A DNA stretch of 53,402 nucleotides, filler included, from Sluysia triapertura (GCA_046118255.1; 4 parts of 4 records of this genome joined end to end with filler, not necessarily neighbours in it), one strand, 5' to 3'. Shown: positions 37,388 through 53,402, numbered from the whole stretch's first letter. A program made the numbers and translations. The notes: generated from the sequence alone by a model not told the origin.

Positions 37388-38247
37388 AATTTTCTCTATT
37401 TGGATAATTTTTATAATTGTATTAAACTTCACTTCTATACAGGTTATATTTAATCATGTTTTAATGTAATTTTTTTTAAATTTGATATAACAATATTCTC
37501 TCAATCTTTAATTTAAGTTAACTTTGATCGAAAATAATGTTATTAATTTTCGATTGCACAGTAGTTTTACTCAACCTCAATTTAATATAATTTTAACTCT
37601 CATGCAAACAATATTTATGTTCTTAAAATTTAATGTTATATTGTCTTTATAGAATCTCACTTTAAAATGATTAATTACTTTATGTTAATCAAAACTAATT
37701 GTTATCTGTTATCAAACTTTGAATTTATATCAACTCTATTGAATCTCATTTTAAATTGACAAAAGCACTATAATCTTAATGAAAATGATTTTAATTTTTT
37801 AGTGGAATTTAATAAATATTATGTTACAAATATAATAAATTTAATTTTATAACCGTACACCAAAATATTTATATAAAATTTAATAATAAATATTAATATT
37901 ATCCGTTATTCAAGAAAAAGAAACAAGAATTACATAGAAAAATAAATTGTTACAAGTCAAAATATAACAAAATAAATCTTATGACAAATAATTACTGTCT
38001 ATATAAATCTAAAACTGATTTTAATTTTTAACCTAAATAATGTTACTGTGCAACATTGTATCTATTAATTGTTATCTTTTAAGTGTTTTAATCATTGTTT
38101 GTACAAAAATGTAAATAAAACTAATTAAATAAAAATAATAATATAATGTAATATATAGAAAAATTTCATTGAATTTTATTGGCTTACTCTGATTGAATAA
38201 AAATAGTATTTCATTAAAATTATTTCATTATTAATGTAAAACAAATA

Positions 38248-38575
38248 ATGATTTGGTGGTATTATTTGATCGCATTAATAATATTTTCTATTTCGAATAT
38301 AAATTGCAATAATACCATGTTAATATATAAAAATGAATATTATCCACGAAATGGAACCTGTGCGAATTTTTGGTATAAGATAGAGGGAGCTGCTGTTGAA
38401 TATGAAAATATTGATTTACCATTTACTAATTTAGAAAATTGCAAGGATATGTGTCTAAGAAATCCTGAATGTCATAGTATTGATATGGGTTTGTCACAAT
38501 GTTACCTGAACAAATATTCCGATAAATACAAATATTATAATTCTTACACACTTTATGTACTAATGTGTTTAAAAG
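38248..38575 (+). CDS. Exon 1 of a secreted/surface protein: signal peptide plus PAN/Apple domain
   Basis: MIWWYYLIALIIFSISNINC signal; LENCKDMCLRNPECHSIDMGLSQCYLN PAN core with an outer Cys pair; phase-1 donor G|GTTAAT. Confidence 0.88.
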
Positions 38576-41500
38576 GTTAATTTAATTCAATATTTTAAAA
38601 TTATTAAATTTATTAAAAAATAATATAAATTCTTATTGAATAATAAAAGAATAAATATTTTTACCCATATTTACAGAAACTATAATAGATAATTTAAAAT
38701 AGATAATTTTTATTGAAATTTAAACATTAAAATTGTTAAAATATGTCAGTGATATTACAACAGTCACAGAAATATTAATAATAATTTTTATAGTGATAAT
38801 ACCTTTTACTAAATTAGTAATCAGAAGCCTCAGACCACGAAATTATTCATTGTATCATATTATATTAATTATATTATAATATATTTTTCATTATATTTTG
38901 TAATCTATTTATTTAGTTGCTGATTATAGATTGTTGTAACACATATCATATATATAACATATCACTTATCTTATTATCACTGTGCATTCTGCATAAATAT
39001 TCATTCGGATTTACTCAATTTTTATTATCTCAAAGCGATATTCAATACTCCGTTAATATAAGAATTTAGATATTACTAAGATGATTTAAATTATTCTCAC
39101 TTTTATTTGTAGCAAGTGTAATTCTTTAAGACAGATCCCATTTTTAATTGAAATATTATTCTTGCTGATTCATTTATTACTAATTTTAAAATTTTCACTT
39201 TATTGTATGTATTTGAGTACAATATACATTTAGTAAAATTTATATTATTAGAGAGCAACTAATTTTGTCCTATTTTTATTAATAAATATTATATTAGATG
39301 ATATTCTCTTCAATTAGTATTTACACTATTTTACAATATTGTCATTAATATTTTCTTTATTAGTTTTACGAGGTGAAAATGAAAATACATAGTTAATTAT
39401 GATGGACAATGAGTTACATGTAATAAAACTAAAATTTTCTGACAATTCAAACAACAAAGTGCATTGTAATAAAATATGTGGCAATATAAAGAAGTAAGTA
39501 AATTTCAGTAATAATAGTTTAATTGTTATTTTACGAATCTAACGAGAAATTATCTGTTCCACGTATTCGTCTGATTCAATTTAGAGAAAGTTAAAAAACT
39601 TCAAATATAAAGAATGTTGCAAATGCAATAAAGGCATTTTCGAAGAAGGAAATCAAACATCTATTTACATATTTTTATCCATGATGATCTTGTTATTTTT
39701 TGTTATTGTAAGTTCATCTCATATAAGTGAGACTAAAAATTTCCTAAAAAATTGTTAAATCTTTCAAATTTTGGTAGCACAATTTTAAAATCTTTATCAA
39801 AATTCATTTCAGATGTTAGAGTAAAACCTCTAATACATTAAATTGTTTTATTTTATATCTGATAACATTACGAATTTTAATAAATGAGTTTCTTTTATAT
39901 TTTATATTTCTAAAGTATTTTCTTAAACATTTAACACTTTCGTAAAATTATAATATATTTGTGTATATATTACACTTTTATTGTAATAAAATTTGCGGTT
40001 CATATTAGACACATTAATTTAAATAAATATTTAGTCGATATGGATTGTAGCATTAATCTAGGTTTATAAGGGGACGCTCTGGACAGAATAACCAATAGCT
40101 ATTAAAGGTTTCGTTTTGAGTCGTATTTATTGCTAAGTCCTAGCTCAGACATAAAACGATCCCATAAGTGAGATCAGTAATTTGTTCTACAAAGAGAAGA
40201 ACAAAAATGGCAACACAATCTAAATTTACTTCAACTTTCTGTTAAGATTTATTTCAATCTCAAAGCCGAATAATAATAATTGGGGAAAATTTCTTTTAAC
40301 GTCTATCCAAAACTTCACTGTAATGTTGACTAACTTGGCATTTGCGAACATAATAAAATCTTTTTTTATTACTAAAAATATATTCTTTTAATAATTAATG
40401 GAGCAAGATCTATCCGAATTAAGATAAAACATAATTAACTAGATTATTAATTATAAAACAAATTTGAAGAACATAACAATAACATGAAATGTAATAAGAA
40501 TAAAATATAAATTGATCATTACAAGATTTCTACAAAATGTTATTTGAAATAAAAGACGTGCTTTAAGCATTTTCTACGCATTTTAGCTACAAATGATATT
40601 CAAGTGTATATCTCTTTAAACCTGTTTCTCGCTGATTATATATAATTGAACTGATAACGATGGTCGATGAACAAATTTCAGTAGACATATTTAGGTTGAA
40701 ATCAAAAAGCCTAACTGTTAATTATAGTAGTTTTCCGTTTAAAAATTTATGAAATTATTTTTAAAATATGTTATTGGTTTCAGCAAAATTTTATTACTTT
40801 TATTAAAACCAAAAAAAGAAGGACTTAAGGTCCTTTAAAAAACATGTCATTGAATTGAATAACAAACAAGAATAATTAATTCCATTTATTAAACAATTAA
40901 TACAAATAAAAACACTAAAAAATTTGTTATAAAAATCAAAACTAGTTAAAATTTTCAACTTTATAAAATTATTGAAACCTAGCCCACAGTAGAATTTCCA
41001 ACTAAAACCTTGTTCGCAAGAAGTGATTGCATTTCCTTAAGCAAAGTAAAATTTTCTTAAATCAAAGGCATTTTGACTTAAACATGAAACACAAAGCTTA
41101 ACAATACATGCTCGGGTAAAACTGTAGTGAGATTCTTGATTTTTTTGAACTAGTTTAGCCGCCTTCCGTTCCTTCAGCTTCGCTTTTAGTTTAGCACAAC
41201 TTAAAGGCAATTTATTTTGAAAATCATCATCGAACAAAATCCCGTTTTTTGAATATTTAAAATAAAAGTAACTTCATTTACATTATCTAAATTATTTTTA
41301 GTATTAACTTGTTCAAAGTCTACAACGCGTGCTTTGACGTTTTTGTGTGACCTATTCGTGGCTCTACTTTGTAACATTTATATTTTCTTAAAAGTTCATG
41401 TGAACTTATGGTAAACATAAAAATATTTCTTCTGAAACACTTTCTGTGGACTCTAATTGACAATAATTAAAATGAAAATATGAATTTAGTTTTACAAATT

Positions 41501-41899
41501 ACTTTTAAATTTTAATATTAAAACAAAACTTTAGAAGATAAAATATATATATGAAATTTCTTTTAAACTTTCTTGTATTTAAATCTTGTTTTGTTTCTTT
41601 TTCCTATGACTTATTTAAATATTCTTTTAGTTTTCTGTCCTCTTTAAATATTGAACAAATTTTGCCTTTATAGATTCCGTGGATATTTCAGAAATATAAC
41701 AGTGTTTCTTGCTGTATGACAAATATATAGTACAACAAAAACAATAAAATGATAATCACAGTAGGACAGCAACAATGTGACCCGTAGTGCGTTATTGGAG
41801 ATGGGATCACATTAGATCAAAAAAGAAAACGTATTAGTTTATTATGATTTTAGGGTGATTGCATTAATTTTGTTGTAAAATTTTATGTTTCGAAGTTTT

Positions 41900-42410
41900 A
41901 TGCTTATGTTAAAAGTGGTAAATTAATAATCTGTGAGCTGAATTTGGCGTATGACGAAATGTTAGTAATAGAAATTGTTGTTGGAGTTTGCGTATGTTTT
42001 AAAATGTGTGAAAAGTATCAAAATGTTTTGTTTGTGAATCGTGTATAGGTTTATGTGTGGAACCAGATCGTCGTATGTGTCTCTGGCACCACAACTACAA
42101 CTTCTATTTTCGGTAATTAGAGACAATTCCCAATTTAAATTCATTCACTTGAATGTATCGATATTAATGGAAATGAGAGTATTAAGATATCAATGTGATA
42201 TCTTTGCAAATATCTAGAAGCTTTTTGTAACGAACAAAACTAGTTTCATTATTGAAAGAAGATGAGGTAATTCATTTTTGCTTATATATTTTGAAATTAA
42301 ATAAAATCGTAAATTATTCGTGGACAAGTTAAAAAGGAATTGTAATTTGTGTTTGCTGGTTAAGAAAAGTTGTAGATCTATTTAATAATACTTGTTTATT
42401 TGCATGAAAT
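41900..42410 (-). mobile_element. Decayed CR1-like LINE RT fragment
   Basis: NIDTFK*MNLNWELSLITEN resembles DLD.+..W...W.L.LN..K; strand-biased composition. Confidence 0.45.
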
Positions 42411-43169
42411 CGTGAAAACCATAGGTCCGAATGACCAGAACTTTGTTAAGCGTAAGTGAGTTTTTGTTTTATTATGCAAAACAATTGATTACTAAATAAT
42501 TGTCGCTGAAAAATGATACACAATGTATTATGTCTAATCATATGCTTATAATTTATATGCTTTTCTAAATTATTTATTTATTTATTTATTAAGTAATTTA
42601 TTTAATATAAATAAGTAAAACTATCTCATATAACATTTTCCATTCAAAATTAATGGAATTTATATATTTATGACAAATTTTACAATAAGAAATGCATTGT
42701 GAAGAATTGTAAACACCAATTGAAGAGGTTATCAAATATCAGAAAATGTATAAATAAAGATATGAATAAATAACTGTGTTTTCATTGATAACGAATATTA
42801 CATACTATCATAATAATGATTATTATACTCATTTTCATATAAAAATACAAAATTTACAATTACTATTGAATGAATTGGTTAGAATATTTGTTCATTTAAA
42901 AGGAGACCTCGTATAACACTTTCTCTTAATGAATTATGAAGGTCACCAATAAAAAGAAGTGTAAATTCAAAATCATTATGGTAATCTCTAAATACTTACA
43001 TTATGGAAATGTTGAATAAAAACAATTGTAGAAATTAAAATGGATTTGTATTATTTTAATACTACAATTATTATTTTATTTTAATACAACAATAAACACC
43101 GTGGGTACAGAGGTAATACGAGGAGTCATAAGTTATGTGCTGTTCACTTTCAAAAATAGTCAAAAGTAA

Positions 43170-43262
43170 CTGAAAGATTATGAAATATTTAAGAAGACAA
43201 TTTATTTCTATTTCAGAAATAACATAAAAAATATCATACTCTAACTACTTTTGAGTATTTAT
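43170..43262 (+). mobile_element. Diverged 3' fragment of the same LINE family as 24450-25560
   Basis: GATTATGAAATATTTAAGAAG...TTTCTATTTCAGAAATA...CTTTTGAGTA. Confidence 0.65.
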
Positions 43263-44499
43263 TTCATAATATATTTTACCGTTAATTCATATTATCATTT
43301 TAGCTAATAAATTATATATCTTTAAAATAATCCTTTTTGTGATCACATATTATTTTATGACATTAATAATGACAAATTTATATCTTTGTCATTATAATTA
43401 AATTAATAATAAATTAATGATTTTATTTATTGTTATTTAAACTATTGTTAGAAGGTTTTATTTACTTATGCGAGAAAAATATATGAAAAATTAAATACCA
43501 CTACATGAATTTTTTAAATTATGTGTTATACAATGTAAAATAAAAGATAAATTCTAGCTTCTATTTTATTTGAATGTTTTATTAATGATGTTGTCTCGTA
43601 TTCGATTTTGATAAAATTTATTCAGATGATTATTTTGTTAATAAATATTTGTTTCTTTATTATTTTGTTCTACCAGAAATAAATGCAATTTATATTATTT
43701 GTTTAATCAGTAATTATATTTACATATAATAAAATAATGATAAAAGAAATATAAATGATGGATGTATTTTGGTTTAATGCATATAGTTTACTTCTGAATA
43801 GCTATAATAATAAATGTTTAATAATTAAAAACATGATCATTATTAAAACATTGACAATACCCTCTTAGGAATGCAAACATTAAATAATAATGTCAGAATA
43901 TATTTTGCAACAATTAGTGCTATTAATTGTTAATGCTGTATTTTGAAACAATTAACAATACACTTGGAGCTTCTTGAGAGAAATATGATTTTATTCTGCT
44001 TTTTTCATCCAACAAAGACCAAACTATTTTTTTCTTTAGTTTAATTTATTTTCATGCAAAAAATTCAATAACGTACCATTTTATTTTCTTATTCCTCATG
44101 AAAATTGTAAATTAAGTTTTCTGAACAAGTACGACCGTACCTCTAACTATAATGACAATTCTTATTGTAAATATTAACAATAAATCTCTAATAGTTTTGT
44201 TGTTTTGATTAGATATTGTGTTAAATCTTTTGCTCTGTTTTTGTCCGTTCAATAGAAAATTATATTTTACTGACGATGTTTACATAATAATTAATGCAGC
44301 CTTTTGACTTTTAAGTTCTTCTTTCAATTAATCTATCACATATCGATTCACAATTAACAACAAACAATAATTTTCGGAATTATAATATTAATTATAACAA
44401 ATATGACAAAATTAAGATAAAATCAATGCAGTAAAAAATATGAAAATCAATAATTTAAATTTTGGAGAGCACAAACCAGAACTTAATAATAATTAAGTC

Positions 44500-44528
44500 C
44501 ACCTAGGCTTAGGCGCTTAATGGCTAGT
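44500..44528 (+). mobile_element. Possible Helitron 3' terminus
   Basis: Imperfect hairpin CACCTAGGCTTAGGCG, 8 nt, then CTAG followed by T. Confidence 0.4.
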
Positions 44529-46025
44529 ACGTAGGATTTGTATAAAAGTAAGTGAATTGGAGGTTGGAAATAAATTAGATTAATTTATAATGGCAACATA
44601 TAAAATGCAGAATAATATATAATAAACAAATATTATAAACTTTGAATAAACTAATACATATTTACAACACAACCATAATCATAAACACAATCATAGACAA
44701 ACAGCAATACAATTTTCATAAATAAATCTTAAACAAACTTCAACACGATAAAACACAAAATATCGAATCAACAAACATACATAAAACAGAAACGACCTTC
44801 ATACGACACAAAATAAATTCAATTCATGTTCACATCAACAGTCATAATAATGATAGCAGTACGCATTGCAATAATTACAAACTACTATTTGTAAAAGAAT
44901 AAAATACAACATTTCATTTGTAAATTTTCTAAATATTTAAATATTTTTGTAATCTAATAAAATATATTATAAATTATTTTATTTTTTACATTTTAATTTT
45001 GTAAATATTATTTTAGTTTTTACATTTTAATTTTGTGAACATTGTAATATTTTTGTAAAATATATTATCTTAAAATATTTAAATCTTAAAAATAGTATAT
45101 TTTATCTCAAAATATCTTTACAAATTTAGAATTATTTGTATGGTATTTTTATTTATAATTCATGATATTTTTATATTAATTTGATTAAGACTTTATATCA
45201 TCACGATAATAAAATCTTTTATTGCGTATGAGATAAAACATATACATAAGAACTTCTAATGAGAAAAGTAACCGAAAAATACTCATAGTGATAAGTCATA
45301 ACAGTTCAAATTATCAAATATATTCACGCGGTTTAGCAATTATCAAATCTTTATTAAGACAAAAACTCATTTGGAAAATAGTAATTGATAACACTTGGAA
45401 AATAAATTTTTCGTGGACATATTCGTTCATGAGTATTATATTCAAGAAATTTATACATTAAATGATTATCATTTTTCTAACCAATTTTCCATGATATGAA
45501 GTCGTAAGTTATTTTTATTAAGGATTGAACTATAATATTTTAGTTTCAAAATCCTAGTTAAAATCATTAATAATTTTTACAAACTCAATAATAATTTCTG
45601 ACTTAATATTATTTTTAAAATCGATAAAAGTCTAAAGCATAGATTCAGTATTAAAATTATTTATATTTTCATATTATTCTGTTGTAGTATAACAACTGCT
45701 ATTTATTGTTTAATAAGAATTAGTCGTGAATTTGTCATTAAGTAACAATGTTAGAAAGTTTATTAAAACATTGAACTGAAATTGAGTAACATTAAATTAA
45801 TATTGTATAAAGAAAACTTAGTTTTGTTCCTAATGAAAGTTCTAACATCAATAGACCTAAGCAATCTATTTATAATTTAAATATTTGTTATTGAATAAGC
45901 TTAGATTTTCCTTCGTTTTAAGGACCATCTTTACGTAAGGATATTATTCGCAGAATGACACGCAAACCCATAAAAGAATTTAATTATAATTGTTGAGTTA
46001 TTGCGTTATTACTATTGTATTGTCA

Positions 46026-46028
<3 letters not shown>

Positions 46029-46095
<67 letters not shown>
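46029..46095. repeat. (ATT)n microsatellite
   Basis: Perfect run. Confidence 0.97.
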
Positions 46096-46098
<3 letters not shown>

Positions 46099-46165
46099 CG
46101 TTTTCTTGTGCGTCTTGTAGTTATGGTTATTATTGTTATTTCTATTAATAATAAATAATATTTAG

Positions 46166-46423
46166 ATATCTCTTACTTAATTGATAAATACCATTTGATT
46201 TTAAAAAGTGATAGTTATTATAATAAATACTTTTATATCAACCTAAATAATAGTATTACGTGTTCTGATAATGCAGTTATAAAAATGAAAGTTTCTAATT
46301 ACACTTTTAAATTTTATAATTTATCTAGCATTATCATAGAACAAACACAGGATTATAAAGGAAATGTTGTGGTTACATGCGGCATTAAAGCACTAAAGAC
46401 GACTTTTGTAATAAACATTTATT
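46166..46423 (+). CDS. PAN-protein internal exon, module A1 (two-Cys beta-rich, Ig-like)
   Basis: TTTAG acceptor and T|GTTAGT donor, open phase 1-1; ...SYYNKYFYINL...ITCSDN...KGNVVVTCGIKALKTTFVINIY. Confidence 0.75.
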
Positions 46424-47822
46424 GTTAGTGATTGATCTTTTATATATCACAAATTAATATTTTATTAATTCGCATTATTTAGTAGTCTTATTAATTTATT
46501 ATTTTTTCTAATATTACTTCACATTTAGGGTGGATCTTTAACGCTTGTTGCCTTGACATAGTTTTATAGTCTTTCGAGATGTTTACAAGATTTATAAAAT
46601 GAGTACCAAGTGAAATAAAGTTAGATTGACAAAGGTGACAAAAATTCTTTAGTAATTTTGTTAAGTTCTTCGACACTCAAAATCTGTTTACAAGAATTTC
46701 ATAAAAATTTTCATAATGAAATTAATTGAAAACTTAAGATTGTTGGATCACAATAAACTTTTACTAGCCGCATAAAATTTCCGTCTCATCATATAATTTA
46801 AAATCTTTTGAAAAACTTAAAATTTAATTGTTAAGTTGTCATCGCAACCCTCTAAAATTATGTAAATTGCTCCAAAATCATTTATAAGTCTCCTAAAACC
46901 TTTAAAATAACTTTAAAAATATTCATTTTCCAAATGATTATTTTTCATAAAAAGAAAATTTACTCCTATAAATAGATTAGAAGCTTCTGGAACATTGCAT
47001 CAATTCTTATTGGTTGATGACTATTACATAAACAAACATCAGTAAAATCACAAGAAACACAATGTATTTAAATCGATTATAGTGGCCTTTTTGCTTTTAT
47101 CATTTTAGTAATTTATCATTCCAGTTTTATTCAATATTGGTGGTATAACTATTTAGAACCTGTTTTTACCATGTTTATCAAAAGTTATTTTTATTAATGT
47201 TAAAACATTAGTAACGTAAAATACATTAAAATTTTTATATTTAAAGTATATAGTACTTATGGTTAAAATCCACTCAAAATTATTATAAACACAATTAAAG
47301 ACCCTTAGCGGTTTAATTCTACTTTATTTCTGTCTTAGTTCGTCTTTATAACATAGTTTAATTTGTTTCTTTCTCTCTCTGTCTCTCTCTCTCTATATGT
47401 AGTGAATTTATTAGATTTAGTTGAAACGCAGTTAAGATTTTAGTAAATACAATAAGTAAAACGGGTTATACAAGTGAGCATTAAGTATAGACCCTCAATA
47501 AGTTATATTATTAGTTATTAAATTGTTATTTTATACAGTTACAGGAACGGCCACTCGTCATTGTAAGTCCTTTACTATAACCGGACCCTGCTCAAAAATA
47601 ATTTTCCGAAGGTTAAGTGTCAGAAAAACCACAGCATAATAATATTAAAGTTACATGATATTAAAACAAAAAAATTTAATATATTTTTTATTAATATATA
47701 TTAAATATATTAAAATTAAATACAAATAAAATTTTTATAGGATAGATAATTTTTTTAAAGAATTTATAAAAAACATTCTTTTCACTAAGGATTAGCATAT
47801 TTTTCTTAAATTTATTATTTAG

Positions 47823-48098
47823 TGAAATATATTTTTTCGAGACCACCAAATTATCCAATATTTCCGTCAAAAAATGTTACTTCACGATTGTACCTCTTTC
47901 TCGGAAATTTAATTACCTTAATTAATTTGAATTGTTCCATATATGAAATTAATAAATGTAACTTCCTATTTATCAGCAGCCATCAAAATTACACATTTCA
48001 CTATATTTCGTTAAAAAACAATACTAAAACTTGTTATTATTGTACCTTTTTTTGTATTTCTTTACACAATATTATAGAATTACGGTTATATTCTTGCA
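47823..48098 (+). CDS. PAN-protein internal exon, module B1 (Cys-rich)
   Basis: TTTAG acceptor and A|GTAAGT donor, open phase 1-1; LNCSIYEINKC...YYCTFFC. Confidence 0.8.
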
Positions 48099-48699
48099 GT
48101 AAGTTCAGTTTATTGTTATATTAAAAATTTTTGTAATATATGTTTGTGTGTTGAAAATAAATTATAGAATATCGCTTATGCAAAACAAAAATGAAATATG
48201 AAAATAAAAATAAGTAAAAAAGTAAATATCATCTATAAATGAAATAAGCATTAATTCATAGATTGCAGTTTTTATAATTGGTAATATTTTTCGAGTCACT
48301 GGATTTTAATTTTGAAGAGAGCTATCGGAAATCAAAAATCAAATGTTACTTTTTTAGTGATATCAACATTGAATTTTCCTTTAATTAAATAAATTGTTTT
48401 AATTAATATGTTGAATGTTGTTTACAAATTTACTATTATTTTTGTAATATATAATTAGCGATACACGTTTTATCTTTTAACGTGTGAAAAGATGAATGAT
48501 AGAATTGTTTTGGATATTTAAAGTATATTTTATGTAATTGTTGATTGATGAATTAACAAATTTCGACAATATAAGAAAATACGTCCTAAAATAAAGGTAA
48601 TGACACGAATAAATAAAAAGAAAGGTGTTAGTGACTAAACAGATAATGATATTTATAAGTTATTAATAAATAAACAGATTAACATAAGCTAAAATAAAG

Positions 48700-50320
48700 A
48701 AAAACATAGGAGAATTCTGGCCTCCATTGTACTTCAATGTGATAAAACGAAGTTATTAACGACAAAAAATCGATAAAAATCTTAGACTTTGGATTAATAA
48801 TCAAGAAGGACGGATAAATATAATAACAGAAAAGTAATCAAAACATTTAATAAGCTCTCATATATGCTTGGCAGTGACAACAAGTTGAGGAAGTTCAACA
48901 AATAATGTGCCTTTGATTGTAGCAAACTGAAGATTAGTGAAAATATTTTTTATTCGATACATAGGACTGTCAAAAATCGGCACCAAATCGAATCCGAGTA
49001 AAGGATACTTTATCAGGAATGAAACTTAAGAACTTCATTAGAGAGAGAATACGCAGTAAAAGTAGGTGTAGAAATTTGTATTGCGAACACCATAACCATT
49101 CTTCAATAATAGAATAATCAAACGTTCTAAAACATTTTAAAATATTATCTAATAATTGCAGAGATGCTTTCGAAACTGGTTATATAAATTTAAATAAAGG
49201 CGACAAATTAAGGTTTATGAGAAAATAATTTATAATATTAGAACCGCAGGTAATGTATTTCTAGAAGAAACGTGGATCTACGTAATATGAAGAGAAAATT
49301 TATCACAATGTTGTAGCACAGAAAACAATCGTAGTAAGCGTAAAACATTTAATGAAAGTTTTGCTATGGAGAAAGGAATCATGATGTCACAACTAAACTA
49401 GTTGACACAGAGGAATTTAATTTAATTTAACGAGTTAGATCAATTCCAAGGTCAAATTAATATATTTTAAATAGGTAAAATTCAACTTAGGAACCGGATA
49501 TTTATATCAAAAAGATTATGAATTTCCAATAGAAGAAGTGAATCGGAAACAATTAAATAAGAATAACGATTAAAATAAAGTGAAACTCTGACTATTTTAA
49601 TGGCAAATAAAGATGATGGTTTAATATTTATTTAAAAGGTTTAATAATCTTCTGCGCTAAAGAAATTACAAAAACTAATTATCTATCCAAACAACGAATA
49701 TTGCAAGCAGAAAATAGAGCGTATGCAAAAAGTGTAAAAATATGTATTTTAAAGTTAAATAAATTTTTATTCTTATCTAGGACTAATATCTTTAGAAAAA
49801 ATATATCAAATTATGGTATATGAATTTTGGTATAGAAACGAGGCAAGTAGATTAAACCGATGGTTCTTTAAACTATCGGATTCGCTTTGGAACTTTGGAA
49901 AATGGTGTTGATTTTACATCTGGATTGACAAACATAGATGATAAATGCAATATTAATTTTATACGAATTATGACGATTTCTGGCAGGTGAAAATACGAAG
50001 GAGATAATTTAACACCAAAGAGATGATAACCAAATTTCTTTTATAACAGATACCATGGCAAAATGCACATTAAATGAAAATCAATCAAAAGATTGGCGAT
50101 TACGGACAGAATGTTGAAAATTAAAATGCAAAGGATGAGTAAAGAACTATTGTTCCACAATCTTTAATTAAACCGATATTAATTCAATTCCATGATGGGC
50201 AATTGGACGACCATGTATCGACAAGGAAGATATGGAAAATGATATTAAAATAATTGTGCACTGTTTTAAGTAAAATAGAACAAGGAAAATTAAAAAATTA
50301 AGTGACTCATTAATAGTAAC
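48700..50320 (+). mobile_element. Decayed RTE-like LINE (endonuclease and RT remnants) in an intron
   Basis: Fragments ICIANT (endonuclease), NFGIETR (YG.ETW-like), AIGRP (R.RGRP-like); purine-rich sense strand, many stops. Confidence 0.5.
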
Positions 50321-50946
50321 AAAGTATAAAAAAATTCCTAAAGATATATCTTTCGCAAGAATATAAAGCTTAGACTATAGGCGAAACCGTAATAATAATT
50401 AAATTAATTTTACATAAATAAGATAAAAACCTAGCTTAACAAAGCACACTAGAGTTTGATTAAACTGAAACTTCGGAATTACTTGGCAGTACTCTATTTG
50501 TTTCATTAATAATATTTAAAAATTTTATTTGACGAAATACTTTTGAGTAGTATTTTTTATTCAAAATGAATCATATAAAAGTTTTTTGGTAACAAATATA
50601 TTTCTGCTTCTTTGTAATGGAGGACGTTCTATAAGAATTCTAATAGATTATTTATTTACTTAAACATAAACAAAGATTTATCAATTTGTGTTAAAAGGCT
50701 TCATATTTTTCTTTAACTTATTAAAAATTATATTATTTAACTTTGATATTCAATAAAGCATTTTATTCAAATATCAAATCAACTTCTATTGTTAATGATT
50801 AAAGATAATTTTAATTTAATCTATTGTAATTTTCAACAATTTCATTCTTAAGTCAGAATCTTACAATGATAATAAAATATTCGTTAAAAATTCGAATGAA
50901 ATTAATTTTCTAGTAAAATTTTTAATTGTTAAATATTTATATTTAG

Positions 50947-51177
50947 GAAATTTTACTATTCACATACATCCACCAAAGGATTATTATTATATGACTGAAA
51001 TCGTTATTGTAAGTTTGCGATTTGTTATAAAGGGAAAACACGAAATTCCAGATTACTGCATAATAGACAACTCCCGTTTCCTTAAGACTTTACCAATGAT
51101 AAATGTATCTGGTTTGCATAACATAGCTTGTATTTTAGGCTCGCTTACTGTAAATAAAAATATTAATATTTCAAAAG
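50947..51177 (+). CDS. PAN-protein internal exon, module A2
   Basis: TTTAG acceptor and G|GTTATT donor, open phase 1-1; HPPKDYYY...DYCIIDN...SGLHNIACILGSLTVNKNINISK. Confidence 0.78.
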
Positions 51178-52626
51178 GTTATTTAATATATAGAAAAAGT
51201 TACATTAATAATTAGAATGTTATATATTTGTTTAAAAAATGTCTTGTATATTTCTCATTACTTATGGACAATCTAATAAAATTAATTAAACTATTTATAA
51301 TTTCTTTTTTATTACAATTTAATTTAGTATATTCAAATGACATTAATCAACTAATTTTAGTATTATTTTGTACAAATTGTTTATCTGCTATGGTGTGAAA
51401 TGGAAATATTTCTACAGAAACAGTAAACTCAATTTTCAAGTATGGAGGACTTTGTACGCTTTATTTATATAAAGAAATTTTATCTGTTTTTGCAAATTGA
51501 AAATATTAAACTTATGAGAAGTTTTTATTGTTCTTTTCTTATCATTATATACATTTAACTTAGGCTTAATGCCTTTAACAAAAATTAATCCGAACAAAAT
51601 AAGTAAATATGACATAACGACATATTTCTATAAATATTTGTTCGAAAGTCAGTATAATTCTTGATAAATAAATAGTGGAAATGTTTGATAAATTTTATAT
51701 AATAAATACCAACTGATTTTAATAGTATAATTGACTCAGTATACAATTCTTTAAAATTATTACGAATGTGATTATGTTTTGTATGTATTGAGTAATTTGT
51801 TTAGTAATTTGTCTGTATAAGAAGTATTTATTTGTGTTGATTTTTGTGATTGCAGTGAGATGATTTAGAGTTCAAATATTTCAAGGTGAAATATTTACGT
51901 AGTTCTTTTGTAGTATATAACTTTACTATCTTCCGAAATTTACCTTACGTGAAAACGAATAATAAATGTATGCTACAGTAGCATTCTATTTTTTACTGTT
52001 AATATGCTTTTACGTTTCACATTACATGTAGGAAAAAGTATATAGGTTAAAAAGTATAATTAAAATTTAGAATAAAAACTTTAAAAATTAACTTAAGCAA
52101 ATACGCCTAAATATCAAAGGGCAGGAATATTTTTGTTACCATAATAAAAGCCAGAATCGAAAAAATTACTAATTACGAAGTTGACTCATTTAATTTTGGA
52201 ATCATTTTTGGCCAATTATTTCGACTCGATAAAGTTATTCAACAATGTATAATTTATGATATGCATGGAAAACATTTTATAAATTGGAGTTTTCATAAAC
52301 AAAAATTTTGGATTAATATTATTGCCGATATTAAACAAATCTATTTCTTAGTATAGTTAATTGAGATTTTAATTTATTTTTTATTAGACTTTTTTCTTTA
52401 ATGAGTCCAGAACTAACTTCTAATATGTATAGTCATAATAGAAACCGATTAAACTAATAGTTTTGGTACAAAATAAAATTATTCGTCACATCTTGGTGTT
52501 AAATTTTAATAATAAAAATGGTAATTCAAGTTAGTGTGGTTTAATGGTAAATTAGTTATTGTTTTGCGACCACATAAAGTCAAAATATAAATATCTTAAA
52601 GTAATAAATGTATAAAAAGCATAAAC

Positions 52627-52627
<1 letters not shown>

Positions 52628-52695
<68 letters not shown>

Positions 52696-52696
52696 T
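52628..52696. repeat. (AAT)n microsatellite
   Basis: Perfect run. Confidence 0.97.
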
Positions 52697-52751
52697 TCAC
52701 ATTTAGTTCAATGTTATCTTGAAAGACCTAAATGTTATCCTTTTTTCCCAG

Positions 52752-52994
52752 AAAAAAATGATTTTATTACAATGAGCAGTTATTGTCCCGAAACAAAAAT
52801 AAAATTAAATATGAATTGTACAATTGAAGAACTTCCATGTAATGATTTTTTGCTGAAAATCTTAGATTCTGAAAATATGGTAGCTGAATTTTATTTTATC
52901 CATTATAAATTTTTAAAAGTACTTAATTATAAATATTGTACGTTTTTATGTTATCGAAAGTATTTGTTCTTCACATTAAAGATTTTTATCAACA
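52752..52994 (+). CDS. PAN-protein internal exon, module B2
   Basis: Polypyrimidine tract with CAG acceptor and A|GTTAGT donor, open phase 1-1; MNCTIEELPC...KYCTFLC. Confidence 0.82.
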
Positions 52995-53402
52995 GTTAGT
53001 TAATTAAATTATTAATTCATGAGATGTTGTTATTTTAAAAGAAAAAGTGTCTTCAATTTTCAAATAAATATTCATAGCAAGATAAATCTATACTTATTAT
53101 TATTGTTGTGCATACAATAAAAACTCTTCGTGTACATTAATTGGATTTATAATCAAATCTTAAAATATAATCAAATATCAGAAAAACAAATTTTATAGCA
53201 TTCTTGATTTTTTTAAGTATTGTAAAGATTAATTATTAATAAGAAAATTTCTTTGTAAAACTATCTAAAATTTAATTACACCAAAAAACTCCATTAAAAA
53301 CAATAAAATTATTGCTAATAATTACATTATAGAAAAATATTATGTAAATTAAAAATTAAGTCAAAAAGTAATAACATAATAATAAACAATAAGTGAATAA
53401 AA

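What the first reader, a model, noticed from the sequence alone, without database searches (positions are those of the whole stretch)
38248..52994. Modular surface protein: PAN domain followed by alternating A-B-A-B cysteine modules in symmetric phase-1 exons
Seen: five plus-strand exons (38248-38575, 46166-46423, 47823-48098, 50947-51177, 52752-52994) splice in one open frame, every junction phase 1, giving about 445 aa with many NxS/T sites. Exons 3 and 5 share NC.I.E..(.)C and YCTF.C. Exons 2 and 4 share YY...C..DN...G...+.C...L....INI. Known: one-domain-per-phase-1 exon is typical of Ig-like and other shuffled extracellular modules. Inference: a duplicated two-domain unit of highly diverged or undescribed beta-sandwich domains in a lineage-specific receptor or adhesion protein, where any exon can be skipped in frame. 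The gene continues beyond the window.
Basis: partly seen in the sequence, partly recalled or inferred. Interest (0 to 1): 0.75.

Follow-up and report, generated by a model that had tools for sequence, protein, structure and literature searches.

The report
Orphan secreted PAN-domain modular gene
This is very probably a real five-exon gene from an unidentified, extremely AT-rich eukaryote; it encodes a secreted protein with a PAN/Apple-like domain and four roughly 80-95-residue cysteine modules, two of which are clear duplicates with no detectable relatives, which makes it interesting as a lineage-specific orphan but not extraordinary.

Summary
The five exons are real features. They splice into one open frame at AG/GT borders, and every junction is phase 1. 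They sit inside the five longest stop-free stretches of all six frames, all on the + strand, where about 0.4 per strand is expected.

- **Splicing:** the only public run holding this DNA (X1, library type unknown) has two contigs joining 48098 to 50947 (GT..AG). That is exactly the predicted exon 3/exon 4 junction.
- **Exon 1:** it has a signal-peptide-like start and a weak PAN/Apple signature. The Pfam hits are below cut-off. A protein language-model search also points to PAN.
- **Exons 3 and 5:** these are true paralogues (z=9.6, 31% identity). This holds only once exon 5 starts 45 nt upstream, at 52707. They share four cysteines and the motif RPxxYPxFPxKN, and 10 of 28 conserved residues use different codons.
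- **Exons 2 and 4:** no significant similarity, so "A-B-A-B" is only half shown.
- **Relatives:** an exon 3+5 profile found nothing among 1.84 billion proteins, in PDB or in metagenome contigs.
- **Fold:** AlphaFold2 models were unusable, so "beta-sandwich/Ig-like" is untested.
- **Caveat:** X1 carries a TGT>TGA change and a T7>T6 change in the exons. The organism and function are unknown.

The parts
38248..38575 (+). Exon 1: ATG, hydrophobic signal-peptide-like N-terminus (about residues 1-20), then a PAN/Apple-like domain with the cysteine core C-x3-C-x5-C-x9-C-x-L. Ends in phase 1 at the donor AAG|GTTAAT.
   Evidence: The ORF and donor are shown. Pfam gives PAN_1 E=0.005, PAN_4 E=0.0065 and PAN_3 E=0.11, all below their gathering cut-offs. 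The ESM Atlas nearest clusters are PAN/Apple families, score 0.91 with recognition 2837. AlphaFold2 places a helix at residues 3-15, at low confidence.
38576..46165 (+). Intron 1 (7590 nt). No further module-like exon was detected in it. A (TTA)31 microsatellite lies at 46006-46096, just before the acceptor.
   Evidence: tblastn of all exon peptides against the piece found no extra copies. The ORF list is and the tandem repeats. Pfam found nothing credible on intronic ORFs.
46166..46423 (+). Exon 2 ('B1', 258 nt, phase 1-1). It has two cysteines 38 residues apart and matches no family.
   Evidence: The acceptor is TATTTAG and the donor is GTTAGT, and both lie within a few nt of the ORF ends.
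47823..48098 (+). Exon 3 ('A1', 276 nt, phase 1-1). It carries the RPPNYPIFPSKN motif and four conserved cysteines spaced C-x7-C-x27-C-x3-C.
   Evidence: The donor TTGCA|GTAAGT is used in the spliced contigs of run X1, which join 48098 to 50947.
50947..51177 (+). Exon 4 ('B2', 231 nt, phase 1-1). It has two cysteines 24 residues apart. Its relation to exon 2 is not demonstrable.
   Evidence: The acceptor at 50946/50947 is confirmed by the X1 joint. That rules against the alternative phase-1 acceptor at 50913 that I considered.
52707..52994 (+). Exon 5, revised ('A2', 288 nt, phase 1-1). It is a paralogue of exon 3 over its whole length. The donor A|GTTAGT sits at the same alignment column as the exon 3 donor.
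   Evidence: tblastn of exon 3 matches 52721-52987 at E=2.7e-5. The alignment A1 shows 31% identity with 28 invariant columns, and z=9.6. Ten of the 28 conserved residues use different codons. The sequence is shown.
52627..52695 (.). A perfect (ATA)23 microsatellite directly upstream of the revised exon 5 acceptor. It is the reverse complement of the (TTA)31 run upstream of exon 2.
49200..49399 (.). A high-copy interspersed repeat inside intron 3. Further repeats lie at about 47400-47799, 49600-49999 and 51400-51999.
   Evidence: Summed contig depth in X1 is 8246 here, and 470-1150 at most of the other repeats. Single-copy intron sequence has a depth of about 12-28. No Pfam family was found on local ORFs.

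Best explanation
A genuine spliced protein-coding gene of an unidentified eukaryote with about 23% GC. It encodes a secreted or surface mosaic protein built as follows: signal peptide, one PAN/Apple-like domain (exon 1), then four cysteine-containing modules of about 77-96 residues, each on its own symmetric phase 1-1 exon.

The modules on exons 3 and 5 are ancient duplicates of one 4-Cys module, about 92 aa, with the motifs RPxxYPxFPxKN ... NC.I.E...CN ... YC.F.C. This module has no detectable relatives elsewhere. They most likely arose by tandem duplication of a roughly 4.8-kb two-exon unit (exon 2+3 giving exon 4+5), after which the first module of each unit diverged beyond recognition.

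By analogy with other PAN/Apple mosaic proteins, the likely role is extracellular binding of protein or carbohydrate (adhesion, matrix or recognition). The disulfide-stabilised modules would act as spacers or additional binding units.

**Shown:** the exon structure, the phases, the exon 3-4 junction and the exon 3/5 paralogy under protein-level constraint.
**Inferred:** the link of exon 1 to exon 2, secretion, the fold and the function.
For: - **Open frame and splice sites:** one open frame with canonical AG/GT sites and all junctions phase 1.
- **ORF excess:** the exons lie within the five longest stop-free stretches of six frames, all on one strand, against about 0.4 expected per strand.
- **Splicing:** two contigs in run X1 join 48098 to 50947, skipping 2848 nt with GT..AG ends and 50 nt on the shorter side. 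These are exactly the predicted exon 3 donor and exon 4 acceptor. Other X1 contigs cover the introns.
- **Paralogy:** exon 3 against extended exon 5 gives z=9.6 and 31% identity from end to end, with flush exon ends.
- **Protein-level constraint:** 10 of the 28 identical residues use different synonymous codons, including all three prolines of the motif.
- **PAN:** three PAN-clan Pfam models hit the same segment, and independent language-model neighbours are PAN/Apple clusters.
- **Composition:** Cys is 5.3% against 3.0%, and NxS/T sequons are 2.9 against 1.1 per 100 aa, compared with control ORFs.
- **Duplication spacing:** the spacings of exon 2 to 4 (4.78 kb) and exon 3 to 5 (4.88 kb) are similar (coordinates).
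Against: - No run on record as RNA holds the locus. X1's library type is unknown, so the spliced joint could come from a retrocopy in DNA rather than from mRNA.
- Codon-position GC is hardly periodic.257/.274/.228 against .261/.244/.241 in control ORFs, and exon GC is close to intron GC.
- Exon 3 scores like a shuffled sequence in the ESM Atlas (recognition 1030).
- All PAN hits are below the Pfam gathering cut-offs.
- X1's version of the locus has TGT>TGA at the conserved Cys codon 52817-19. It also has one T fewer in the T7 run at 48047-53 of exon 3, in 25.8 of 44.3 depth. Both would disrupt the frame in that individual or copy.
- The exon 1 to exon 2 link rests only on strand, phase and the need for a signal peptide.
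- Exon 2 and exon 4 show no significant similarity.
Confidence: 0.72

Rival explanations
1. All four modules are extremely diverged immunoglobulin-superfamily (Ig-like) domains, so the protein is simply a PAN+Ig adhesion molecule whose sequence has been eroded by AT mutation pressure.
For: - One domain per symmetric phase-1 exon of 230-290 nt is the classic IgSF gene structure (my own knowledge).
- Each module has one Cys 32-38 residues from the exon start and a 'hydrophobic-x-C' or 'Y-x-C' 14-18 residues from the exon end (sequences).
- The low-confidence AlphaFold2 model of exon 3 puts a beta hairpin at residues 71-90.
Against: - No Ig family (ig, I-set, V-set, C2-set, Ig_2, Ig_3) appears in Pfam even at E<=10 for any exon.
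- The exon 3+5 profile found nothing in PDB sequences or among 1.84 billion proteins, although Ig domains are very abundant there.
- The Cys-Cys spacings of 24-40 are shorter than typical Ig spacing, and there is no conserved Trp.
- The models are too poor (pLDDT 38) for a fold search.
Confidence: 0.3
2. The locus is a dying or polymorphic pseudogene, or one member of a fast-turnover family. The window's haplotype happens to be intact, but the gene is not maintained by selection.
For: - X1 carries an in-frame TGA at the conserved Cys codon, as the only form seen at that place. It also carries a T7>T6 frameshift in exon 3, and a cluster of four substitutions at 52747-52756 that removes the conserved P and K of the motif.
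- Eight of 13 listed variants fall in exons, which make up 13% of the laid stretch.
- Codon periodicity is weak.
Against: - Five intact long ORFs in 23% GC DNA cannot persist without selection.
- The exon 3/5 conservation is at protein level, with synonymous differences.
- The exon-biased variants may come from paralogous or retro-copied sequence laid onto the exons, not from this locus.
- Homopolymer length in short-read contigs is error-prone.
Confidence: 0.15
3. Exon 1 (the PAN domain) belongs to a different gene from exons 2-5. The true 5' exon of the module gene lies elsewhere in the 7.6-kb gap or is unrecognised.
For: - There is no junction evidence for exon 1 to exon 2, because the laid stretch began at 47000.
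- Phase compatibility alone has a 1 in 3 chance.
- Intron 1 is much longer than the other introns.
Against: - Exons 2-5 lack a start codon and signal peptide, and exon 1 supplies both and ends in the required phase with an AG|GT donor.
- No other + strand ORF of 75 or more codons, and no module-like sequence, lies in the gap.
Confidence: 0.2
4. These are chance open frames in AT-rich DNA and there is no gene.
For: - There are no homologues.
- Composition is close to background.
- Single ORFs of about 85 codons occur by chance in such DNA; the mean longest in simulations was 85-87 codons.
Against: - Five such ORFs lie on one strand, against 0.4 expected.
- The splice sites and phases are all consistent.
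- The paralogy is significant.
- There is a PAN signature.
- A spliced joint sits exactly at the predicted sites.
Confidence: 0.03

Closest known systems
PAN/Apple-domain mosaic extracellular proteins (Pfam clan PAN: PAN_1, PAN_3, PAN_4; for example plasminogen/HGF N domains, plasma kallikrein apple domains, nematode and insect PAN-containing matrix proteins, apicomplexan MIC adhesins)
   Same: It has an N-terminal secretory signal followed by a roughly 70-aa domain with the core '..C-x3-C-x5-C..(aromatic/aliphatic)..C-x-L'. It is combined with other disulfide-containing modules. The PAN families are the only Pfam and Atlas neighbours of exon 1.
   Different: Scores are below every PAN gathering cut-off. 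The partner modules are none of the usual ones (no ZP, kringle, serine protease, EGF, TSR or lectin in Pfam).
Immunoglobulin-superfamily genes with one Ig domain per phase 1-1 exon
   Same: The symmetric phase-1 exons are of Ig-domain size. There is a Cys pair per module, a 'Y-x-C' near the module end, and many N-glycosylation sequons.
   Different: There is no sequence-level Ig signal in any exon. The Cys spacing is shorter and there is no invariant Trp. The fold was not testable.
Plasmodium 6-Cys (s48/45) proteins with alternating A-type/B-type domain pairs
   Same: Both are AT-rich coding sequence for surface proteins, with cysteine modules occurring as alternating pairs (my own knowledge of that family).
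   Different: Pfam s48_45 does not match. These modules are about 80-95 aa with 2-4 conserved Cys rather than about 120 aa with 6. The multi-kb introns are unlike Plasmodium genes.
PAN + zona pellucida (ZP-N/ZP-C) cuticle and matrix proteins of insects and nematodes
   Same: A PAN domain precedes roughly 100-aa, 4-Cys, Ig-like ZP-N-type modules (my own knowledge). The A module has four conserved Cys.
   Different: The Zona_pellucida family was not detected in any exon. The module order and repetition (B-A-B-A) do not match a single ZP-N/ZP-C pair.

Membership tests
PAN/Apple domain (Pfam PAN_1 / PAN_4 / PAN_3) | A sequence match to a PAN-clan HMM at or above the curated gathering score. | tested here: not met
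   PAN_1 scores 17.0 bits against 21.4, PAN_4 16.9 against 27, and PAN_3 12.8 against 21.1. Three related models do hit the same segment at E=0.005-0.11.
PAN/Apple domain (Pfam PAN_1 / PAN_4 / PAN_3) | The conserved cysteine core (C-x3-C ... C ... C-x-L) within about 70 aa of a secreted protein. | tested here: met
   Exon 1 reads ..ENCKDMCLRNPECHSIDMGLSQCYL.. and is preceded by a hydrophobic N-terminus. Atlas neighbours are PAN/Apple clusters, score 0.91 with recognition 2837.
PAN/Apple domain (Pfam PAN_1 / PAN_4 / PAN_3) | The PAN fold (an alpha helix packed on a curved beta sheet). | tested here: inconclusive
   The single-sequence AlphaFold2 model has pLDDT 40.7, so no fold search is meaningful.
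Immunoglobulin superfamily domain | A match to an Ig-family HMM, or to solved Ig structures by sequence. | tested here: not met
   No Ig family was found at E<=10 for exons 2-5. The PDB profile search was empty, as was the search of 1.84 billion proteins.
Immunoglobulin superfamily domain | A beta-sandwich fold with a B-F strand disulfide. | tested here: inconclusive
   AlphaFold2 on the exon 3+5 alignment gave pLDDT 38.3. No fold search was run because such a model gives meaningless matches.
Immunoglobulin superfamily domain | One domain per symmetric phase-1 exon. | tested here: met
   Exon lengths are 258, 276, 231 and 288 (or 243) nt, all phase 1-1. This feature is shared with many other extracellular modules, so it is not diagnostic.
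6-Cys s48/45 domain family | A match to Pfam s48_45, with six conserved cysteines per roughly 120-aa domain. | tested here: not met
   There is no Pfam hit. Each module has only 2-4 conserved Cys.
   A1-A2 gives z=9.6. B1-B2 gives z=-0.9, or 1.9 with the ORF extension. Only the similar 4.8-kb spacing supports the B pairing.

The most novel reading that the evidence does not exclude
The exon 3/exon 5 module (about 92 aa, RPxxYPxFPxKN plus four cysteines spaced C-x7-C-x27-31-C-x3-C) is a previously undescribed extracellular domain family confined to an unsampled, extremely AT-rich eukaryotic lineage. It would be amplified by tandem duplication of a two-exon unit and could be mixed by in-frame exon skipping or alternative acceptors (52707 or 52752) to give surface-protein isoform diversity.
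Probability: 0.35. Interest if true: 0.45.

Novelty: new variant of a known kind. Interest (0 to 1): 0.35.

Why it matters
If the model holds, this is a typical product of exon shuffling: a PAN domain plus phase-1 cassette exons. Two of its cassettes belong to a module that a search of 1.84 billion proteins could not place. That would add a new extracellular domain and a marker for an under-sampled AT-rich lineage.

It is also a worked example of how far extreme AT pressure can erase family signals while the exon architecture survives. The value is modest. Orphan secreted proteins are common in poorly sampled eukaryotes, and neither the fold, the function nor the organism is known.

Tried and rejected
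**Searches and models that gave nothing**
- Word-index protein search with exon 1 and exon 3 found nothing, within its length limit of 0.55-1.75 times the query.
- The exhaustive HMMER search with the exon 3+5 profile found 0 hits at E<=1e-3.
- PDB sequence search with exon 1 and with the profile found only noise or nothing.
- Metagenome contig scans with the profile and with exon 1 gave pattern matches but no tblastn-confirmed relative.
- The ESM Atlas gave no usable hit for exon 3.
- AlphaFold2 on the exon 3+5 alignment and on exon 1 gave pLDDT 38 and 41. I therefore ran no fold search.
- Rfam and tRNA scans of the piece were empty.
- Pfam on 18 intronic ORFs, looking for transposon remnants or a lineage clue, found nothing credible. 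My by-eye suspicion of a mariner-like remnant near 49876-50040 was not supported.

**Ideas rejected**
- An alternative phase-1 acceptor for exon 4 at 50913, and the 'ILKS[DE]SY' similarity upstream of exon 4, are rejected as the used site. The X1 joint lands at 50947.
- An alternative genetic code (TGA as sense) was considered because of the TGT>TGA variant. Nothing else supports it.
- The GC-poor aphid-parasitoid wasps (23.8-25.8% GC, many orphan genes; PMC7257214) were read only as a compositional analogue. No test links this piece to them.

**Tools and steps not available or not done**
All searches were exon by exon, by reference. The joined frame was only translated locally to check that it is open.
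- The B modules (exons 2 and 4) were not put through the exhaustive search, which allows one job. The third word-index search was not spent on them either, because the length limit makes a blank uninformative.


Full report
**Scope.** Only places 37388-53402 are genome. This piece is 16,015 nt with no N and 22.8% GC. The joined protein was never given to a search or fold tool.

Yes for the gene structure.
- The five stretches join into one open frame of 1336 nt. Exon 1 is 328 nt (3n+1), and exons 2-5 are 258, 276, 231 and 243 nt, so every junction is phase 1.
- All acceptors are AG after an AT/pyrimidine tract, three of them TATTTAG. All donors are GT, reading GTTAAT, GTTAGT, GTAAGT, GTTATT and GTTAGT.
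- A mechanical list of stop-free stretches shows that the five longest in all six frames (120, 89, 104, 131 and 101 codons) are the ones containing these exons. All are on the + strand, and the next longest is 81.
- Sequences simulated with order 1-3 Markov models of the piece give on average 0.38-0.46 stretches of 89 or more codons per strand, and never five in 400 trials per order.

**2. Direct evidence of splicing.**

No run on record as RNA holds the locus. One run (X1, library type not on record) holds 86% of the sampled words. I laid its contigs on 47000-52999.
- Contigs cover the introns at a fairly even depth of about 12-28.
- Two contigs (summed depth 45.7, 50 nt on the shorter side) join 48098 directly to 50947. 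They skip 2848 nt that begin with GT and end with AG.
- Whether the contigs come from cDNA or RNA in a mixed library, or from a processed retrocopy in DNA, cannot be decided here. Either origin implies that a transcript was spliced at these sites.
- The joint also rules out the alternative exon 4 acceptor (AG at 50912-3) that I had considered.
- Exon bins are about 2-3 times deeper than single-copy intron bins, which fits an extra intron-less form.
- No joint 51177>52752 was listed. One joint row was dropped at the masked repeat 52612-52708, which contains the revised exon 5 acceptor. This is suggestive only.

**3. The modules.**

*Exons 3 and 5 are homologous.*
- BLASTP gives E=0.002, and local alignment against 2000 shuffles gives z=5.0.
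- The sequence there has a CATTTAG acceptor (AG at 52705-6) in the same phase.
- With exon 5 taken as 52707-52994, the two exons align from first to last residue. Identity is 31% with 28 invariant columns. These include R-P-x-x-Y-P-x-F-P-x-K-N, N-x-N-C-x-I-x-E, H-Y and Y-C-T-F-x-C. The score is z=9.6 with 0 of 5000 shuffles reaching it.
- Both exons end at the same alignment column, followed by A|GT(A/T)AGT.
- At the 28 identical residues, 10 codons differ synonymously, including all three motif prolines. Nucleotide identity is 0.43/0.54/0.51 at the three codon positions against about 0.32 by chance. So the conservation is at the protein level.

*Exons 2 and 4 are not demonstrably related.*
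- BLASTP gives E=0.43 and the shuffle test gives z=-0.9.
- Taking the full open stretches gives z=1.9 and p=0.05. That signal comes from an 'ILKS[DE]SY' match lying upstream of the acceptor that X1 shows to be used.
- The only further argument for an A-B-A-B duplication is positional. Exon 2 to exon 4 spans 4.78 kb and exon 3 to revised exon 5 spans 4.88 kb.
- There is no detectable DNA similarity between the introns, so the duplication is old.

*Exon 1.*
- The N-terminus is hydrophobic (MIWWYYLIALIIFSIS...).
- Three PAN-clan models then hit the same segment: PAN_1 E=0.005, PAN_4 E=0.0065 and PAN_3 E=0.11. All are below their gathering scores.
- The characteristic C-x3-C-x5-C-x9-C-x-L core is present.
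- Independently, the ESM Atlas feature search returns PAN/Apple clusters, score 0.91 with recognition 2837.
- I accept 'PAN-like' as likely but not as a certified member.

**4. Relatives and fold.**
- Exons 2-5, including the extended versions, match no Pfam family at E<=10 beyond noise.
- The exon 3+5 profile found nothing in PDB sequences, nothing at E<=1e-3 among 1.84 billion representative proteins and nothing in metagenome contigs. Exon 1 likewise found nothing.
- AlphaFold2 gave unusable models, pLDDT 38.3 for exon 3 with exon 5 as its alignment and 40.7 for exon 1. I therefore ran no fold search, and the 'beta-sandwich' idea remains untested.
- By eye each module has one Cys 32-38 residues from its start and an 'x-C' 14-18 residues from its end. 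With the exon phases, that makes a very diverged Ig-like or ZP-N-like domain a reasonable guess of about 0.3. It is a recollection-based lead, not a result.

**5. Points that weaken the case.**
- Coding signals other than ORF length are faint. GC at codon positions is .257/.274/.228 against .261/.244/.241 in control ORFs, and exon GC (22-29%) is barely above the background.
- X1 differs from the window mainly inside the exons:
  - One T fewer in the T7 run at 48047-53 of exon 3, in 25.8 of 44.3 depth, including the intron-containing contig.
  - Four substitutions at 52747-52756, in 27.3 of 39.3 depth, changing the motif's P and K.
  - At 52816, 52819 and 52859, the only form present has N>K, TGT(Cys)>TGA and I>V.
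- Eight of the 13 listed variants lie in 13% of the stretch.
- The simplest readings are that close paralogous or retro-copied sequences are being laid on the exons, or that the gene is polymorphic for disabled alleles. Fast-evolving surface-protein families often show the latter. I cannot separate these readings.

**6. What it most likely is and does.**

It is a lineage-specific gene for a secreted or surface mosaic protein of about 460 aa so far. Its parts are a signal peptide, a PAN/Apple-like domain and four disulfide modules.
- PAN/Apple domains mediate protein-protein or protein-carbohydrate binding (established knowledge of the family). The best functional guess is therefore extracellular adhesion, matrix or recognition, with the modules as binding or spacer units.
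- Because exons 2-5 are symmetric, any of them can be skipped in frame. The two in-frame exon 5 acceptors, 45 nt apart, could also give isoforms. That is arithmetic, not observation.
- The gene probably continues beyond the piece, because the exon 5 donor is positionally homologous to that of exon 3. If the donor is unused, a TAG stop follows one codon later.

**7. Organism.**

Unknown. The features are 23% GC, multi-kb GT-AG introns and interspersed repeats at several hundred to thousands of times single-copy depth in X1. These point to a repeat-bearing eukaryote with extreme AT bias. Animal genomes of this composition do exist, for example aphid-parasitoid wasps at 23.8-25.8% GC with many orphan genes (PMC7257214). 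Nothing here ties the piece to them.

**8. Verdict.**

Two corrections apply: exon 5 starts at 52707, and the B-module pairing is unproven. Novelty is a new variant of a known kind, namely a PAN-led, exon-shuffled extracellular mosaic carrying an orphan 4-Cys module. Interest is moderate to low (0.35).

Noticed in passing
window 48098 / 50947 (run X1): The only public run holding this DNA contains both intron-bearing contigs and two contigs with intron 3 precisely removed (GT..AG). The run's library type is not on record, so this is either cDNA in a mixed library or a processed retrocopy in the genome.
   Followed up: partly
window 52816, 52819, 52859: In X1 the only contig at this place has AAT>AAA (N>K), TGT>TGA at the conserved Cys of the N-x-N-C motif, and ATC>GTC (I>V). 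The TGA would be a premature stop under the standard code.
   Followed up: partly
window 48047-48053: The T7 homopolymer inside exon 3 is T6 in 25.8 of 44.3 depth in X1, including the contig that runs on into intron 3. This is either a frameshift allele or a homopolymer error.
   Followed up: partly
window 52747-52756: A cluster of four substitutions in 10 nt (C>T, C>A, A>G, A>T) occurs at 27.3 of 39.3 depth in X1. It turns TTTTTTCCCAGA into TTTTTTTCAGGA and changes the conserved P and K of the module A motif. It looks like a patch from a paralogue or a second copy.
   Followed up: no
window 46006-46096 and 52627-52695: Two long trinucleotide microsatellites, (TTA)31 and a perfect (ATA)23, are reverse complements of each other. 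Each lies directly upstream of an exon acceptor (exon 2 and revised exon 5). Together they form a 6.5-kb-spaced inverted repeat.
   Followed up: no
window 49200-49399; also 47400-47799, 49600-49999, 51400-51999: These intron segments have very high summed depth in X1 (8246 at the first, and up to about 1150 at the others, against about 12-28 for single-copy sequence). They are high-copy interspersed repeats. No Pfam family was found on their ORFs, and they show no similarity to each other within the piece.
   Followed up: partly
window 48400-50400: This part of intron 3 is somewhat GC-richer (25-30%), with strong positive GC and AT skew. It looks like an inserted element. A by-eye resemblance to a mariner-type transposase motif near 49876-50040 (- strand) was not supported by Pfam.
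   Followed up: partly
window 39585-39755 (+): A 57-codon open stretch in intron 1 has a CC-x-C cluster followed by an 18-residue hydrophobic segment. It has no Pfam match and no similarity to the modules, so it is probably chance.
   Followed up: partly
window 52440 > 47809 (run X1, table 5c): One X1 contig (depth 11.3) links sequence resembling intron 4 near 52440, through 34 foreign letters ending in a good acceptor (..TTTCCTGTTTACAGG), to sequence starting 14 nt before exon 3. It may come from a paralogous A-module locus or from a low-complexity mis-join.
   Followed up: no
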